From contig NC_043000.1 of the NCBI RefSeq assembly GCF_006345805.1, forward strand, positions 20,150,001 to 20,214,000: 64,000 bases of DNA, in the 5' to 3' direction. Shown piece after piece: positions 14,613 to 64,000 of this stretch. How positions within the stretch are numbered: position 1 is the stretch's first letter; each line of letters begins with the position of its first letter. Below the pieces are notes generated by a model. The model did no database searches, was not told where the DNA came from, and saw nothing but the letters and a program-made list of their open reading frames with translations. The position numbers were made by a program, and so were the translations under genes. Origin of the DNA: Octopus sinensis (taxonomy: Eukaryota).

Positions 14613-14988
14613 GGAGGCACAATGGCCCAGTGGTTAGGGCAGCGGACTCGCTGTCGGAGGATCGCGGTTTCGATTCCCAGACCGGGCATTGTGAGTGTTT
14701 ATTGAGCGAAAACACCTAAAGCTCCACGAGGCTCGGCAGGTGAACCCTGCTGTACTCTTTCACCACAACTTTCTCTCGCTCTTTCTTCCTGTTTCTGTTG
14801 TATCTGTATTTCAAAGGGCCAGCCTTGTCACAATCTGTGTCACGCTGACTCTCCTCGAGAACTACGTTAAGGGTACACGTGTCTGTGCAGTGCTCAGCCA
14901 CTTGCACGTTAATATCACGAGCAAGCTGTTCCGTTGATCGTATCAGCTGGGACCCTCATCGTCGCAACCGACGGAGTGCTCCTACTAC
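14613..14988 (+). mobile_element. SINE-D, full length with 13-bp TSD
   Basis: Head GGAGGCACAATGGCCCAGTGG...TTCGATTCCC and (CTA)n tail. TSD TAATTTGAGGGAG at 14600-14612 and 14989-15001. Confidence 0.93.
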
Positions 14989-20685: not shown

Positions 20686-20947
20686 TGGAGGCGCGTGGCT
20701 TAGTGGTTAGGGTGTCAGCATCATGATCGTAAGATTGTGGTTTCGATTCCTTGACCGGGCGACACGTTGTGTTCTTGAGCAAAACACTTCATTTCACGTT
20801 GCTCCAGTCAACTCGGCTGGCAAAAATGAGTACCGCTGCGATGGACTGGCGTCACCTCCGTCTGGGGAACACATACATCATAGAAACCGAGAAACCGCGC
20901 CCATGAGCCTGGCTAGGGTTTAAAAGGGCGCATTTTTTTTATTTTTT
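20686..20947 (+). mobile_element. SINE-C (tRNA head, CORE-like, V-domain-like), 14-bp TSD
   Basis: GGAGGCGCGTGGCTTAGTGG...TTCGATTCC, TTGAGCAAAACACTT, CTGCGATGGACTGGCGTC. TSD TAATGCGTACAGGG at 20672-20685 and 20948-20961. Confidence 0.9.
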
Positions 20948-37425: not shown

Positions 37426-37716
37426 ACCCCCTTCGGTCATTGCACCTAGAAAGTTACCCTCCCAGGCACAAGTCCGGGCAAGATTGTTTATGGAAGACCA
37501 GCAGTCGCCCATGCATACCGGCTTCCCCAAGGAAAAGGCAAAGGCCGATACAGCTTGGCACCTGTGACATCGCAACTCATTTCTACAGCTGAGTGAACTG
37601 GAGCGACGTGGAATAAAGTGTCTTGCTCAAGAACACAACACGCAGCCCGGTCTGGGATTCGAACTCACAACCTCATTTCGTAAGCTCGACGCTCTAACCA
37701 CTGAGCCATGCGCCTC
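37426..37716 (-). mobile_element. SINE-C-headed element with a distinct tail
   Basis: GGAGGCGCATGGCTCAGTGG...GTTCGAATCCC, TTGAGCAAGACACTT. Tail GGCGACTGCTGGTCTTCCATAAAC...ATGACCGAAGGGGG. Confidence 0.88.
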
Positions 37717-42376: not shown

Positions 42377-42477
42377 CATACCAAAGCAGTATATCTTTAC
42401 GATGACCAAATCAATGTATTTTTGTTCAGTTCCGGCCTTCCATACTTATACTTATACTTTCTAGCACTCTGTCTTTT

Positions 42478-43078
42478 ACGACAAGTGTTCCAGTTAATCC
42501 GACGAACGGAACAGCCTGCTCGTGAAATTAATGTGCACGCGTACCCCTAACGTAGTTCTCGGGGAGATTCAGCGTCAGTACAGAATGTGATAATGCTGGC
42601 CCTTTGAATTACTGGTACAACTCATTTTTGCCAGCTGACTTGTTGTTTGTTCTTTCTCGAACCACGCCCGGCTCATAAGGGCCGGTTTCCCGGTTTCCTT
42701 GGCGTATAGGTTCCCCACCTGGACGGGACGCCAGTCCGTCGCAGGTGAGCTGCAAGATGCAGGAGGAAAGAGTGAGAGAAAGTTGTGGCGAAAGAGTCAG
42801 CAGAAGTTCGCCATTACCTTCTGCTGGAGCCGTGTGGAGTGGAGCTTAGGTGTTTAGCTCACAAACACACACATCGCCCGGTCTGAAATTCGAACCCTCG
42901 ATCCCTCGACCGCGAGTCCCCTGCTCTAACCACTAGGCCATGTGCCTCCACTTTTGCCAGTTGACTGGACTGGAGTGACGTGAAATAAAGTATTTCAGGG
43001 TTACAACACGCCGCCAAGAATCGAATTCACGACCTTAAGATCGTGATCCGACTACCCTAACTACTAAGCCACTCGGCT
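42478..43078 (-). mobile_element. Host SINE (C head and CORE-like, D tail) split by SINE-E
   Basis: Head at ~43078-42967. Continues after the insert as CAGCTGGCAAAAATGAGTTGTACC...TTAATTTCACGAGCAGGCTGTTCCG. Confidence 0.82.
42641..42951 (-). mobile_element. SINE-E (D head and core, V-like domain), 15-bp TSD
   Basis: TGGAGGCACATGGCCTAGTGG..., CCTGCGACGGACTGGCGTCCCGTCCAGG, tail GAAACCGGGAAACCGGCCCTTATGAGCC...AACAAACAAC. TSD TTTTGCCAG(C/T)TGACT at 42626-42640 and 42952-42966. Confidence 0.93.
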
Positions 43079-43134
43079 TTACACTCTGCTTATATATAAG
43101 GTAAAGTAAAAGGACAAATTAAGCTTATCTAACA

Positions 43135-43480
43135 TGGAAGCACTCCATCGGTTACGACGACGAGGGTTCCGGTTGATCCGAATCAACGGAACAGCCTGCT
43201 CGTGAAATTAACGACACGTGTACCCTTAACGTAGTTCTCGGGGATATTCAGCGTGACACAGAGAGTGACAAGGCTGGCCCCTTGAAATACAGGTACAACA
43301 GAAACAGGAAGTAAGAGTGAGAGAAAGTTTTGGTGAAAGAGTACAGCAGGGATCACCACCATCCCCTGCCGGAGCCTCGTGGAGCTTTAGGTGTTTTCGC
43401 TCAATAAACACTCACAACGCCCGGTCTGGGAATCGAAACCGCGAGTCCGCGCTGCCCTAACCACTGGGCCATTGCGCCTC
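43135..43480 (-). mobile_element. SINE-D
   Basis: Collinear with 14613-14988. Confidence 0.9.
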
Positions 43481-44026
43481 AAACCCGATTTCGGCCAACT
43501 GAGACTCTTCATGTTAAGTTATGATCAAATTCCTGATGCAAACACCTTGTTTCCAAAGTGGTGCGCTTTTTGAAGGAACTTTCTTATACGATACGCTCAA
43601 AGGCACGTTTAGTTGAATCGACATTGAACAGAGTGAATGGTTATGACATATTACATAACACATACATGCACACACCTCCACACACACATACACTCATATA
43701 CACACACACACGCATGAAGGGGAGCCTTTCTCCCTCCCCTTCATCCGCTTCCCCTTTTTTTATCTGTCGCTCCTTCTTTCTGCTGTCTTTCTCCACTACC
43801 TGCTACTTTTACACGACCAGCGGCCAGTTCCTCTTTTTCTTCCTTTCTTAGACTGGTCCCAGAGCTGACCAGTCGCAAATGCTGTCTCTCCGTTCCCCAT
43901 CCTTCAAAACATTTTCTAAGCGTTACCCACTATTCTCGTTTCCTTGGCCCCAAGGCTGTATTTTGTTCGACTTCACACACACACACACACATATATACAT
44001 ACATACATACATACATACATATGTAT

Positions 44027-44093
<67 letters not shown>

Positions 44094-44094
<1 letters not shown>

Positions 44095-44290
44095 TCTTTT
44101 ACTTGTTTCAGTCTCCTGACTGTGGCCATGCTGGAGCAACGCCTTTAGTCGAGCAAATCGACGCCAGGACTTATACTTTGTCAGCCTAGTACTTAGTCTA
44201 TCGGTCTCTTTTGCCGAACCGCTAAGTTACGGGGACGTAAAAACTTCAGCATTGGTTGTCAAGCGATGTTGTGGCGACAAACACAAGCAC
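44094..44290 (-). mobile_element. SINE-B 3' half followed by a (CA)n/(TA)n tract to ~44458
   Basis: Tail and GGTTCGGCAAAAGAGACCGATAG segment. Confidence 0.87.
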
Positions 44291-44457: not shown

Positions 44458-44466
44458 ACTGCGTGA

Positions 44467-45632
44467 CCTTGGCATTGCTGGAAAACTTGGAGACTGGTTA
44501 CATGACTTCCTGAAAGATAGGAGTCAGGCAATAGTGGCTAATGGAGCCACCTCAATGAAGACACAAATAGTGAGCGGTGTCCCACACTGCTTTTTATAGT
44601 GGCCCTCTCAGATATGCCCTCAAATGTCCGGATAGCCACCCTTGCAAGCTATGCAGATGATACGAAAGTCTCGCAGAAAATACAGAACTCCAGCGATGTT
44701 GCACACCTTCAGCAGGAGTTGGACTCAATTTACAGATGGGATGAAGATAATAATATGCAGTTTAATGCTGAAAAATTCCAAGCTCTGTGCTACCAGCATC
44801 CAAAACTGAATATGAAACTTACAGGGTACACCGGTCCACAGGGAATTTCAATCCCAGAGCCTAAGTCAGTGAGGGACCTGGGTATCGACATGAGTGATGA
44901 TCCCTCTTTCCAAGTGCACATTACCAGGATGGCGACAAAGTGCAGACGACTGGCTGGATGGATCCTAAGAACATTCAGAACCAAAGATAATGAAACCATG
45001 ATGGTCCTCTGGTGGACATTCGTCCTCGGCCGCCTGCTTTACTGCTCACAGATATGGTCACTCACCAGTGTGAAATTAACAGCGGACATTGAAGCAATCC
45101 AGAGAAGATTCACAAAGAAGATCGTCTCTTTGTAACAGCTCAGCTACCGGGAAAGGTTGAAACAGTTAAGACCCTACTCCCTGGAAAGAAGACGGGAGAG
45201 GTATGCAGTAATATATATCAGGAAGATCCTGGAAGGAATTGTGCCAAATTTTGGCGTTGAAAGCTACACCAATGCCAGAACGGGACGACACTGCATAGTG
45301 CCAAAGGTCCCAGCAATGCCATCACGCTTCAGGACCAGTTACTACAACAGCCTGGGTTTCAAGGTACCACAGCTTTTTAATATTCTCCCAAAGAGTCTGA
45401 GAAACTTGCACAAAGTAGATGTAGGGCTTTTTAAATCAAAGCTGGACCTCTTCCTGTCGAGAGTCCCAGATGAACCTACCTCACGGCAAGAGGTGCAAAT
45501 GAGGGTAGCTATATCAAACTCCATGCTTCACCAAGTGCCACATATTAGAGGAGGTTCTTAGTAATAACAGTGTAGTAAAACGGCGATGCATTAGCATGGC
45601 CGCAGCTCTGAGCTGAAACTAGAGAAAAAAAA
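44467..45632 (+). mobile_element. 5'-truncated CR1-group LINE (RT C-terminal half plus 3' UTR)
   Basis: [29 protein letters not shown] (YADD at 44650), RDLGI, LERRRERY, A-rich end. Possible TSD ATATA(A)CTGCGTG at ~44454-44466 and ~45636-45647. Confidence 0.92.
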
Positions 45633-45647
45633 TACATATACTGCGTG

Positions 45648-45740
45648 GACAGGAGCAACGTGAAATAAAGTGCCTTGCTCAAGGGCACGACGCGCCGGCG
45701 AGAATCGAACGCACCTTAACCATTAAGCCACACGCCTCCA
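45648..45740 (-). mobile_element. SINE-C head/CORE fragment
   Basis: GTGGAGGCGTGTGGCTTAATGG...TTCGATTCTC...CTTGAGCAAGGCACTTTATTTCACGTTGCTCC. Confidence 0.75.
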
Positions 45741-61689: not shown

Positions 61690-61745
61690 AACCATCACCG
61701 CCGCCGCCACCATATATCATTACCATCATCATCACCATCATCGCC

Positions 61746-61777
<32 letters not shown>

Positions 61778-61841
61778 CATCACCATCATCATTATCATCA
61801 TCATCATCATCATCACCATCATCATCATCACCACCACCACC

Positions 61842-61897
<56 letters not shown>

Positions 61898-62825
61898 TAC
61901 CGTCATATCATCACTATCACCATTACTAACTACACCAGCACCATCACTATCACCACCAGCACCACCGCTACCACCGCTGTTACTACCACTACCACCACCG
62001 ATACCATTACTATCGCCACCACCACCACCATCCCCGCTACGATCACTATCGCAACCACCAGCAACAACCACAAATAAACTCAGCGCCGCACATCCTCACC
62101 TCCACAACCATCACATTAAACCCACACAAACGTCAGTAAACACCACCACCACCATCACCACCACCATCACCACCACCATCACTACTATCACTACTATCAC
62201 TACCACTATCACCATCACCACCATCACTACCGCCACCATCACCACTATCACCAACACCACCACCATCATCACCACCACCATCACCACCATCACCACCACC
62301 ATCACCACCGCCACCATCACAACCACTACCACCGCCATCACCACTATCACCACAACCACCACCATCACCACCACCACCATCACCACCACGAACACTACCA
62401 CCACCCACATCACCACTTTCACCACTACCAGCACCACCACCTCCACCACCACCACCACCAATACCTAGAAAATTTAACATTACCACTTATACTACTGCCC
62501 AAACAACAACAACAGCAGCCAAATCTCTAAACACTATCACCACCACCACCACCACCACACCATCATATCACTACGACCACGACCACCGCAACTACACCTA
62601 CTACTACTACTGCTGCTACTACCTCTACTACTACTACTACAACTACTACTGCAGATGAAACTGCTACTACTGCAACTCCTGCTAATGCAACTTCTACTGC
62701 AGTTGCTACTACTACTACTACAACCACTTAAACTACTACTACTACTGCAGATGCTGCTACTGCTACTACAACTACTACTGCAACTACTTCTGCAGCTGCT
62801 ACTACTACTACATCTACTACTGTTG

Positions 62826-62859
<34 letters not shown>

Positions 62860-64000
62860 GCTGCTGCTGCTACTAGAACTACTACTACTGCTCTATCATC
62901 ACTACTACAAATAATAATACTAACGTCTCTACCGTTACGACTACCATCACCGCCACCACCAACACTATCACCACTACCACCACTACTTCCACTATCGGCA
63001 TTATGACTACCAACCACGACTACCACCACCACTACCACTAACAGCAACAACAAGAGTAGGAACAACAACACTGCCAACACCATCACCAACAGCATCACTA
63101 CTACCACCAACACCACAACCAATGGTACCATCGCCATTTTGGCAATTTCACTGCCTTCACTACTACCTACGCCAATACCACCATCAACAGCACCACTCCA
63201 ACAACCATAATCACCACTACCACCAATACCATCTTCAATACTGCTGCCAGAACCACCACAACCAGTAGAACTATCAATATCACCAGCACTCTGCAATCGC
63301 TACCTTCAATAGTACCACTACTACCATAACAACAACAACAATCACTAACGCCACAACTACCACCACCACTACAACTACCTCCATAGCCACCACTACCACA
63401 ACCATCACCACCACAATCGCTACCATAGCCACCACCACCAACACCACAACATCCACCGTCACCACTTCCACCACAACCACAACCAGAACCACCACCACCA
63501 CAACCACCACCACAGCAACCATCACCACCACAACCACCACCGCCACAACCACCACCACCACAACCACCACCACCACAAAACCACCACCACCACAACCACC
63601 ACCACAGCCACCACCACCAAAACCATCACAACCACCACCACCACAACCACCACCACAGCCACCACTACAACCACCATCACCACAACCAACACCACCACAA
63701 CCATCACCACCACAACCACAACAGCCACCACCACCAAAACCACCACCAACGCAACCACCACCACCACAACCACAACCACCACTACCACAATCACCATCAC
63801 AACAAACCCCACAACCTCCACAACCACCACCAATACTACTATTTCACCAATACCACCACTATCAATAGCACCCCTCCTACCACCCGTACTACTACCTCCA
63901 TCACAACCACCACCACTAGTAACAACAATAACATTGCCACCACCAATACCCACATCACTACCAACACCACCACCACCATTACCACAACCAGCACCTCCAC
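61690..64000. repeat. 2.3-kb degenerate (CAC/CAT/CTA/CAA)n trinucleotide domain
   Basis: Read directly. Triplet phase shifts repeatedly. Source of the poly-V/G/M ORFs. Confidence 0.88.

What the first reader, a model, noticed from the sequence alone, without database searches (positions are those of the whole stretch)
42626..42966. SINE-in-SINE targeting: SINE-E inserts at one ~20-bp site of another SINE
The window has two SINE-E copies, and both interrupt the same host family (CORE-like plus D tail) at ...CTCAGCTGGCAAAAATGAG.... Here host and insert are co-oriented, with TSD AGTCA(G/A)CTGGCAAAA. At 60067-60392 they are in opposite orientation, with TSD GGCAAAAATGAG. Different orientation and different but overlapping TSDs rule out one composite element, so these are independent insertions. 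An empty version of the site exists in SINE-C at ~20815-20833. This suggests sequence- or structure-specific targeting of a SINE by another SINE's LINE endonuclease, a parasite using a parasite as safe harbour. I do not know of this being described for cephalopods. With n=2, chance or a generic A-run preference is not excluded.
Basis: partly seen in the sequence, partly recalled or inferred. Interest (0 to 1): 0.75.

Follow-up and report, generated by a model that had tools for sequence, protein, structure and literature searches.

The report
Two SINEs nested at one CORE-SINE spot
Two copies of a young octopus SINE did land independently within about 20 bp of each other in two old CORE-SINE copies, but twelve other copies of the same SINE or its relatives sit elsewhere, so this is at most an insertion hotspot, which is a known phenomenon, and not a homing system.

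Summary
Two roughly 300-bp tRNA-derived SINE-E copies (42641-42951 and 60079-60380, both on the - strand) each split an older CORE-plus-D-tail SINE inside CTCAGCTGGCAAAAATGAG. One is co-oriented with its host (15-bp TSD), the other is opposite (12-bp TSD). Deleting the insert and one TSD copy restores an intact host. The window is from Octopus vulgaris or a close relative.

The targeting interpretation holds only weakly. I recovered 4 more SINE-E copies from O. vulgaris chromosomes and 8 diverged relatives from another cephalopod dataset. None lies in a CORE site; they sit in unique DNA or microsatellites. Most CORE sites in the 145 kb I hold are empty. The four nicks differ by 5-8 nt between the two events and share no nick motif or DNA hairpin. 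Strict site specificity (R2/Tx1 style) is excluded.

A moderate hotspot remains plausible. The motif TTTT-NN-CAGCTG occurs six times in 145 kb, and three of those sit at SINE-E boundaries, one of them outside any SINE. That motif was defined after seeing the data.

TE-in-TE hotspots (Alu-in-Alu) and SINEs homing into another transposon (crocodilian SINEU/Tx1-Mar) are already described. Interest is low to moderate, and a genome-wide flank census would settle the question.

The parts
42641..42951 (-). SINE-E copy 1 (311 bp). It has a tRNA-like head with an A box (TGGCCTAGTGG) and a B box (GGTTCGAAT), an E central module, and a roughly 100-nt tail ending AACAAACAACA.
   Evidence: It is 96.1% identical to the 6-copy consensus.
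42626..42640 (.). TSD of copy 1, on the 3' side of the element: TTTTGCCAGCTGACT.
42952..42966 (.). TSD of copy 1, on the 5' side of the element: TTTTGCCAGTTGACT (14/15 match).
42440..42640 (-). Host 1, 3' part: the end of the CORE domain (AGTCAGCTGGCAAAAATGAG), the D tail, and an (AAGTAT)n end.
42952..43078 (-). Host 1, 5' part: tRNA-like head plus the CORE domain up to ...CAGTCAACTGGCAAAA.
60079..60380 (-). SINE-E copy 2 (302 bp), with the tail AACAAACAACAAAAT. It lies in the opposite orientation to its host.
   Evidence: It is 96.3% identical to the consensus.
60067..60078 (.). TSD of copy 2, left copy: GGCAAAAATGAG.
60381..60392 (.). TSD of copy 2, right copy: GGCAAAAATGAG (12/12 match).
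59996..60078 (+). Host 2, 5' part: B-box remnant plus the CORE domain. It is 5'-truncated (no A box) and preceded by a CTA/CTG microsatellite.
60381..60600 (+). Host 2, 3' part: GGCAAAAATGAG plus the D tail.
20812..20830 (+). Empty copy of the site (CTCGGCTGGCAAAAATGAG) inside SINE-C (20688-20935). SINE-C carries the CORE domain joined to a tail homologous to the SINE-E tail.
37576..37594 (-). Empty variant of the site (CTCAGCTGTAGAAATGAG) in another CORE-SINE family with a different tail.

Best explanation
These are two ordinary, independent target-primed reverse transcription insertions. A relatively young tRNA-derived SINE (SINE-E, about 4-7% from its consensus) inserted into two much older copies of an octopus CORE-SINE family (copies 77-84% identical to each other).

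SINE-E is not a site-specific element. Most of its copies lie in unrelated DNA.

The two events share a roughly 20-bp zone at the 3' edge of the CORE domain, homologous to MIR's CTCATCTGTAAAATGGGG. The most likely reason is that the unknown partner LINE's nicking and integration step has a loose preference for a short sequence found there: a T/A run next to the CAGCTG palindrome. CORE-SINEs carry that sequence about once per 15-18 kb in the DNA I hold, which extrapolates to roughly 1e5 copies per genome. On this reading the SINE is hit often because it is the main genomic carrier of the preferred motif, not because it is recognised as a SINE.

Shown: the insertions, their TSDs, their independence, their relative ages, and the lack of strict specificity.

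Inferred: that a motif-level preference exists and what it is.
For: - Precise TSDs and restoration of a continuous host after removing the insert and one TSD copy.
- Intact host copies exist.
- Inserts are 93-97% identical to their consensus, hosts 77-84% pairwise.
- None of 4 independent O. vulgaris copies is in a CORE site. Their targets are TGGTCCTTTTCT in unique DNA, a TA/CA microsatellite, CA-rich DNA, and ATCTAGAAATAC in unique DNA. None of 8 related-species copies is in a CORE site either.
- TTTT-NN-CAGCTG occurs only 6 times in 145,392 bp, and 3 of those abut SINE-E insertions. One is the independent L001 copy, in the same geometry as window copy 2 (TTTTCT|CAGCTG versus TTTTTGCC|AGCTG).
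- The host core aligns to the MIR core with z = 6.8-8.6, and OR2 of O. vulgaris is a known CORE-SINE (PMC4758252).
- TE-in-TE hotspots used in both orientations are common in human: 82% of insertion types deviate from the expected distribution (PMC2836564).
Against: - Only 6 O. vulgaris copies were examined.
- The motif was defined after seeing the data.
- Window copy 1 uses the site in a different geometry, with CAGCTG inside the TSD near the first-strand nick, so a single recognition mode does not explain both events.
- Two CORE sites with a perfect motif are empty (L004 at 16659 and 13587).
- No partner LINE was found, so the endonuclease preference is untested.
- A chance coincidence picked out by screening many windows is not excluded.
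Confidence: 0.52

Rival explanations
1. Pure coincidence. SINE-E inserts essentially at random, and two of its copies happened to land in the same zone of an abundant repeat. The pair was noticed because many windows and many element pairs were screened.
For: None of 12 independent copies lies in a CORE site. The four nick sites share no consensus. Most CORE sites are empty. My rough look-elsewhere estimate for any such coincidence is 0.3-0.4% per window, which is not rare over hundreds of windows.
Against: The probability for this specific site is about 2e-6 for two of two copies. The independent L001 copy also abuts TTTT-NN-CAGCTG, a motif with only 6 instances in 145 kb. Hotspots in TE-in-TE nesting are the rule in well-studied genomes (PMC2836564).
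Confidence: 0.4
2. Dedicated site-specific homing. The partner LINE's endonuclease recognises the CORE site as R2, R1 or Tx1-clade elements recognise their targets, and SINE-E inherits that specificity and uses the older SINE as a safe harbour.
For: Two of two copies in the window are at the site. There is a precedent: SINEU-3, SINEU-1 and SINEU-2 insert into Mariner-N4_AMi at 90%, 23% and 13% through Tx1-Mar (PMC4494074).
Against: Four of 6 O. vulgaris copies and 8 of 8 relatives are elsewhere. The insertion points differ by 5 and 8 nt, both orientations are used, and the TSDs are 12 and 15 bp. Most sites are empty. SINE-E has a long LINE-type tail with an (AACA)n end, not the poly(A) tail of the SINEU elements.
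Confidence: 0.04
3. Position-based targeting through the Pol III machinery, like the Dictyostelium TRE elements near tRNA genes (from general knowledge). Insertion would occur at a set distance downstream of the host SINE's B box, through TFIIIC/TFIIIB or open chromatin, regardless of the local sequence.
For: Both insertions are about 60-70 nt downstream of the host B-box region. Independence from orientation and a few bp of scatter would be expected on this model.
Against: Host 2 is 5'-truncated and lacks the A box and most of the tRNA-like head. The L001 and L004 copies have no tRNA-like head nearby.
Confidence: 0.02
4. This is not two insertions at all, but one composite element or a segmental duplication carrying host plus insert.
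For: None beyond the same pairing of families.
Against: The relative orientation of host and insert is opposite at the two loci. The TSDs differ. The hosts are 78.5% identical while the inserts are 88.7% identical. The flanks are unrelated.
Confidence: 0.01

Closest known systems
TE-in-TE insertion hotspots in the human genome, including the Alu-in-Alu hotspot at the A-rich linker (Levy, Schwartz & Ast 2010, PMC2836564)
   Same: A younger SINE nests at a preferred position of an older SINE or other TE. Hotspots can be used in both orientations and need not match the canonical endonuclease site. The preference is quantitative, and most copies insert elsewhere.
   Different: In human the result rests on about 300,000 nesting events; here n=2 of 6. 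The mobilising enzyme there is L1 and the elements have poly(A) tails. SINE-E has a specific LINE-derived tail, so its partner is a different, unidentified LINE. The Alu self-insertion hotspot is mainly in the sense orientation.
Crocodilian SINEU families and Tx1-Mar LINEs, which home into the Mariner-N4_AMi DNA transposon (Kojima 2015, PMC4494074). The wider class is Tx1-clade elements such as Tx1L in Tx1D, Keno in U2 genes, and Kibi/Koshi in microsatellites.
   Same: The weaker families (13-23% of copies at the site) are in the range that 2 of 6 would allow here.
   Different: SINEU-3 is 90% at one site with a constant TSD, and a LINE with the same target was identified. Here the site is not constant, the orientation varies, none of 12 independent copies is at the site, and no partner LINE was found. 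The host here is a SINE, not a DNA transposon.
CORE-SINE superfamily (MIR, Ther-1, octopus OR2 of Ohshima & Okada 1994; cited in PMC4758252 and PMC5804259)
   Same: The host elements have a tRNA-like head followed by a central domain that aligns with the MIR core. The insertion zone corresponds to MIR's CTCATCTGTAAAATGGGG.
   Different: I could not compare directly with the OR2 sequence because I do not hold it. The hosts carry a 'D' tail, and other families in the same DNA join the same CORE domain to at least two other tails.
EhSINE/EhLINE insertion hotspots in Entamoeba (Mandal et al. 2006, PMC1635306)
   Same: Non-site-specific LINE/SINE elements whose insertions cluster where a short preferred nicking sequence and favourable local DNA features coincide.
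   Different: There the endonuclease preference (GCATT) was measured in vitro. Here nothing biochemical is known, and single-strand folding shows nothing special at the site.

Membership tests
tRNA-derived SINE (for SINE-E) | Internal Pol III promoter: an A box (TRGCNNAGTGG) and a B box (GGTTCGANNCC) in a roughly 70-110-nt head | tested here: met
   The consensus has TGGCCTAGTGG and GGTTCGAATCT (10/11), by direct reading of the 6-copy alignment.
tRNA-derived SINE (for SINE-E) | The head is recognisable as a tRNA by covariance or structure tools | tested here: not met
   Rfam at E<=1 over 42400-43500 and ARAGORN over the whole window gave no hit. This is usual for diverged SINE heads and does not argue against SINE status.
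tRNA-derived SINE (for SINE-E) | Short (<600 bp), non-coding, many dispersed copies each with its own TSD | tested here: met
   Six copies of about 300 bp in five O. vulgaris regions on different chromosomes, with TSDs of about 12-15 bp in five of them (shorter and unclear in L003), plus 8 diverged relatives.
tRNA-derived SINE (for SINE-E) | 3' tail shared with a partner LINE | not testable with these tools
   No LINE 3' end in the 145 kb held matches the E tail, and no searchable cephalopod genome was available. The tail is shared with SINE-C (78% identity over 78-80 nt).
CORE-SINE superfamily (for the host) | A central CORE domain homologous to the MIR core, downstream of a tRNA-like head | tested here: met
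   Global alignment to the MIR core segment scored 61-68 against a shuffle mean of 28 (z = 6.8 and 8.6). OR2 of O. vulgaris is listed as a CORE-SINE in PMC4758252 and PMC5804259.
Site-specific non-LTR retroelements and their SINEs (R2, R1, Tx1 clade, SINEU/Tx1-Mar) | A large share of copies sits in the same target sequence | tested here: not met
   Two of 6 O. vulgaris copies, 0 of 4 independently sampled copies and 0 of 8 relatives. The sampling is small and mildly biased.
Site-specific non-LTR retroelements and their SINEs (R2, R1, Tx1 clade, SINEU/Tx1-Mar) | A fixed insertion point, a fixed TSD and usually a fixed orientation relative to the target | tested here: not met
   The nicks are offset by 8 nt on the host antisense strand and 5 nt on the sense strand. 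The TSDs are 15 and 12 bp, and the orientations are opposite.
Site-specific non-LTR retroelements and their SINEs (R2, R1, Tx1 clade, SINEU/Tx1-Mar) | A partner LINE found in the same target | not testable with these tools
   The partner LINE was not identified.
TE-in-TE insertion hotspot (in the sense of Levy et al. 2010) | A statistically significant excess of exact nested insertions at one position of the host consensus | tested here: inconclusive
   Two of 6 copies, against a zone that is about 0.14% of the sampled DNA. The pair was selected after the fact and none of 12 independent copies is at the site.
TE-in-TE insertion hotspot (in the sense of Levy et al. 2010) | An integration motif shared between nested and non-nested targets | tested here: inconclusive
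   TTTT-NN-CAGCTG sits at 3 of 6 insertions, including the non-SINE L001 target, and has 6 instances in 145 kb. The motif was defined post hoc.

The most novel reading that the evidence does not exclude
SINE-E's unidentified partner LINE has a semi-specific integration preference for a T-run-N2-CAGCTG sequence. That sequence is rare in unique octopus DNA but is carried in roughly 1e5 copies by the conserved 3' edge of the CORE domain. As a result, 10% or more of SINE-E copies, and of the LINE and of SINE-C (which shares the tail), nest in CORE-SINEs in either orientation. This would be a SINE-in-SINE safe harbour in a cephalopod, and an analogue of SINEU/Tx1-Mar that works through a non-Tx1, tail-recognising LINE.
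Probability: 0.3. Interest if true: 0.5.

Novelty: new member of a known kind. Interest (0 to 1): 0.28.

Why it matters
If the hotspot is real, it would be the first target-site preference described for a cephalopod LINE/SINE pair. SINEs make up a large and recently expanded part of the octopus genome. It would also show that the deeply conserved CORE domain can act as a landing pad, which affects how nested SINE clusters grow and how CORE-derived regulatory sequences get disrupted.

It would also give a practical handle for identifying the partner LINE, which should share both the tail and the target. If the pair is a coincidence, the finding is just two ordinary nested SINE insertions. Either way the concept (TE-in-TE hotspots, SINEs inheriting LINE target preferences) is established, so the gain is incremental.

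Tried and rejected
1. Public DNA collections as a source of octopus sequence. Exact-pattern scans with SINE-E strings found nothing in metagenome contigs with a 34-mer, and only 7 chance 20-mer hits on a second scan. They found nothing in GTDB genome contigs or IMG/VR. No cephalopod genome is searchable here.

2. Protein route. Translating open SINE-E frames and searching for spurious ORFs gave 4 O. vulgaris chromosomal loci. The exhaustive HMMER run gave 7 more ORFs on short Logan contigs from the SRR118693xx runs, from an unidentified related cephalopod. The antisense frame -1 search found nothing.

3. DNA hairpin or cruciform at the site. Folding gave z-scores of +1.1, -0.2 and +0.2 against shuffles, so this is rejected.

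4. L1-like TTTT/A nicking as the explanation for the A-run. Neither first-strand nick lies in the run, so this is rejected.

5. A shared derived subfamily for the two window copies. The alignment shows no shared diagnostic changes.

6. Partner LINE among the window's three RT-bearing fragments (44.5-45.6 kb, 48.6-50.5 kb, 53.2-53.7 kb). Their 3' ends do not match the E or D tails.

7. A possible third event at the same site. The LINE at about 44467-45640 abuts a CORE copy at ...CACGCAGT, but the other side is a microsatellite rather than the rest of the host, so it is not counted.

8. tRNA detection in the SINE heads by Rfam and ARAGORN was negative.

Full report
**What is there.** I read the three regions directly and recomputed the coordinates.

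SINE-E copy 1 occupies 42641-42951 on the - strand. It is flanked by TTTTGCCAGCTGACT (42626-42640) and TTTTGCCAGTTGACT (42952-42966). Copy 2 occupies 60079-60380, also on the - strand, and is flanked by two perfect copies of GGCAAAAATGAG (60067-60078 and 60381-60392).

In both cases the DNA on either side belongs to one older SINE. That SINE has a tRNA-like head, a conserved central domain ending ...CTCAGCTGGCAAAAATGAG, and a 'D' tail. Host 1 is on the - strand, so it is co-oriented with its insert. Host 2 is on the + strand, so it is opposite to its insert.

Removing the insert and one TSD copy gives ...CCAGTCCAGTCAGCTGGCAAAAATGAGTTGTACC... and ...CCAGTTCACTCAGCTGGCAAAAATGAGTAGTACC.... These align without a gap to uninterrupted copies of the same family found later in L004.

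**Independence and age.** The two loci cannot be one composite element or a duplication. The relative orientation of host and insert is reversed, the TSDs differ, and the flanks are unrelated. The hosts are 78.5% identical to each other, while the inserts are 88.7% identical.

SINE-E copies are 93-97% identical to their consensus. Host-family copies are 77-84% identical pairwise. So a younger family has nested in an older one.

**What the elements are.** SINE-E has a head with an A box (TGGCCTAGTGG) and a B box (GGTTCGAATCT), a central module, and a roughly 100-nt tail ending in AACAAACAAC. Rfam and ARAGORN do not call the head a tRNA, which is usual for SINE heads.

The insertion zone corresponds to MIR's CTCATCTGTAAAATGGGG. 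The host is therefore a CORE-SINE, the superfamily to which the O. vulgaris element OR2 is assigned (PMC4758252, PMC5804259).

The families are modular:
- CORE + D tail: the hosts.
- CORE + an E-like tail: SINE-C, 20688-20935.
- E-central + D tail: 14613-14980 and 43142-43480.
- E-central + E tail: SINE-E.

**Getting more copies.** No cephalopod genome is searchable with the tools, and pattern scans of the metagenome, prokaryote-genome and viral collections gave nothing real.

SINE-E has open reading frames, so I searched for spurious proteins translated from it and fetched the DNA that encodes them. This gave four 20-kb regions of O. vulgaris chromosomes from GCA_951406725.2 (L001-L004). That identifies the window as O. 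vulgaris or a very close relative. It also gave eight short Logan contigs carrying roughly 80%-similar E-like elements from one other cephalopod dataset.

**Result of that sample.** The four extra O. vulgaris copies have these targets:
- TGGTCCTTTTCT in unique DNA.
- A TA/CA microsatellite.
- CA-rich low-complexity DNA.
- ATCTAGAAATAC in unique DNA.

None is in or next to a CORE-SINE. None of the eight relatives has CORE or D-tail sequence anywhere on its contig.

Conversely, the 145,392 bp of O. vulgaris DNA held contain 8 CORE sites within 3 mismatches of the 19-mer, plus two indel variants. Only the two window sites are occupied.

Zero of 12 gives a 95% upper bound of about 22% for the fraction of copies at the site. 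For O. vulgaris alone (0 of 4) the bound is about 53%.

One caveat applies. The O. vulgaris copies were reached through annotated ORFs of 100 aa or more, and the CORE site introduces early stop codons in most frames. Copies in that site are therefore somewhat under-sampled; I estimate their sampling efficiency at roughly 0.7 relative to other copies.

**Geometry of the two events.** The 3' tail marks the first-strand nick.
- Copy 1: the first nick is on the host antisense strand after ...CAGCTGACT, and the second is on the sense strand after GGCAAAA.
- Copy 2: the first nick is on the host sense strand after ...AATGAG, and the second is on the antisense strand after ...TTTTTGCC.

The nicks are therefore offset by 8 nt on the antisense strand and 5 nt on the sense strand, and the TSDs overlap by only 7 nt. 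Across the six O. vulgaris targets there is no common sequence at the first-strand nick. Neither first nick is in the A/T run, so an L1-like TTTT/A preference does not explain the site. The target DNA has no unusual single-strand fold.

This is not the behaviour of a site-specific endonuclease of the R2, R1 or Tx1 kind.

**A hint of a motif.** The independent L001 target reads TGGTCCTTTTCT|CAGCTG. Window copy 2, read on the SINE's sense strand, gives CTCATTTTTGCC|AGCTG. Both have the same T-run, a two-base spacer, and the CAGCTG palindrome at the 3' TSD boundary.

TTTT-NN-CAGCTG occurs only six times on either strand in the 145 kb:
- The two window sites.
- The L001 site.
- Two empty CORE sites in L004.
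- One site in another repeat.

So three of six SINE-E insertions abut the motif, and three of six motif instances are occupied. I defined the motif after seeing it, and copy 1 uses the site in a different register, so this is only a lead. If it is real, the preference is for a short sequence that CORE-SINEs happen to supply in very large numbers, and not for the SINE as such.

**How unlikely is the coincidence?**
- For this specific zone (about 0.14% of the sampled DNA), two of two copies has probability of about 2e-6.
- The relevant question for a screen is how often any same-family pair of insertions hits the same position of any host family. From the SINE densities seen here I estimate about 0.3-0.4% per window.

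That is uncommon, but it is expected to turn up if hundreds of windows are read. Weighing this against the motif hint and the known prevalence of nesting hotspots, my probabilities are:
- Real but moderate hotspot: about 0.5.
- Pure chance: about 0.4.
- Dedicated homing: about 0.04.

**Comparison with what is known.** Levy et al. analysed about 300,000 exact nested insertions in human (PMC2836564). They found that 82% of insertion types deviate from the expected distribution. Hotspots can be used in both orientations and need not contain the canonical L1 site, and Alu has a sharp self-insertion hotspot next to its A-rich linker.

Kojima showed that crocodilian SINEU-3, SINEU-1 and SINEU-2 insert into one region of the Mariner-N4_AMi transposon in 90%, 23% and 13% of copies. 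The cause is that their Tx1-Mar partner LINEs have that target (PMC4494074). Those SINEs have poly(A) tails, unlike SINE-E.

Mandal et al. showed hotspots for non-specific Entamoeba LINE/SINE elements that arise from a short nicking preference plus local DNA features (PMC1635306).

An octopus SINE-in-CORE-SINE hotspot would be a new member of that kind, not a new category.

**Verdict.** The partner LINE is unidentified. I could not run it here.

Noticed in passing
window 14613-14980 (+), 43142-43480 (-), 20688-20935 (+), 42641-42951 (-), and the hosts at 42440-43078 and 59996-60600: The octopus SINE families form a 2x2 module swap. The central domains (CORE or E-central) and the tails (D tail or E/C tail) occur in all four combinations behind similar tRNA-like heads. 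The junctions fall at the same place as the insertion zone, right after ...GGCAAAAATGAG or its E-central equivalent. This points to template switching or recombination at that boundary.
   Followed up: partly
window 44459-45648: A 5'-truncated LINE (RT C-terminal part with YADD, weak RVT_1 hit) lies at about 44467-45640 (+), with a candidate 8-bp TSD ACTGCGTG (44459-44466 and 45641-45648). Its 3' junction falls at ...CACGCAGT of a CORE-SINE copy (about 45641-45740, -). That is the position homologous to CTCAGCTG in the SINE-E zone. On the 5' side the flank is a TA/CA microsatellite rather than the rest of the SINE, so it cannot be counted as a clean third hit.
   Followed up: partly
window 45590-45640 (+) versus 44090-44135: The 3' end of that LINE (...GCATGGCCGCAGCTCTGAGCTGAAACTAGAG) resembles, in reverse complement, the end of a separate repeat at about 44090-44290 (...CATGCTGGAGCAACGCC... 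/ TTTCAGTCTCCTGACTGTGGCCATGC). This may be a LINE/SINE tail-sharing pair unrelated to SINE-E. I judged it by eye only.
   Followed up: no
L001 10235-10246, window 42626-42637 and 60062-73, L004 16659-70, 13587-98 and 11042-53: TTTT-NN-CAGCTG is rare (6 instances in 145 kb, both strands), and half of the instances are at SINE-E TSD boundaries.
   Followed up: partly
window 48610-50463 (-) and 53236-53667 (-): There are further degraded LINE reading frames: RVT_1 fragments with FADD, and a zf-RVT domain. Their 3' regions do not match the E or D tails.
   Followed up: yes
window 7917-8921 (+) and 28645-29043 (-): There are Mariner/Mos1-type transposase remnants. The first ORF gives an HTH_48 hit; I judged the second only from its translation.
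   Followed up: partly
window 1-1550, 22999-24774, 26980-27476, 59700-59990, 61600-64000: Very long trinucleotide and other microsatellite arrays give spurious ORFs of hundreds of codons. The one at 59700-59990 (CTA/CTG) directly abuts the 5'-truncated host 2. Two of the four independent SINE-E copies also sit in microsatellite or low-complexity DNA (L002, L003).
   Followed up: no
window 42440-43480: Three SINEs lie within about 1 kb: host 1, its SINE-E insert, and an E-central+D-tail SINE about 60 bp from host 1's head. This is a local SINE cluster.
   Followed up: no
L005, L014-L024 (Logan SRR11869384, SRR11869390, SRR11869391, SRR11869394): E-like SINEs about 75-86% identical to SINE-E occur in another cephalopod dataset whose species I could not identify. 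The family or its parent therefore predates O. vulgaris.
   Followed up: partly
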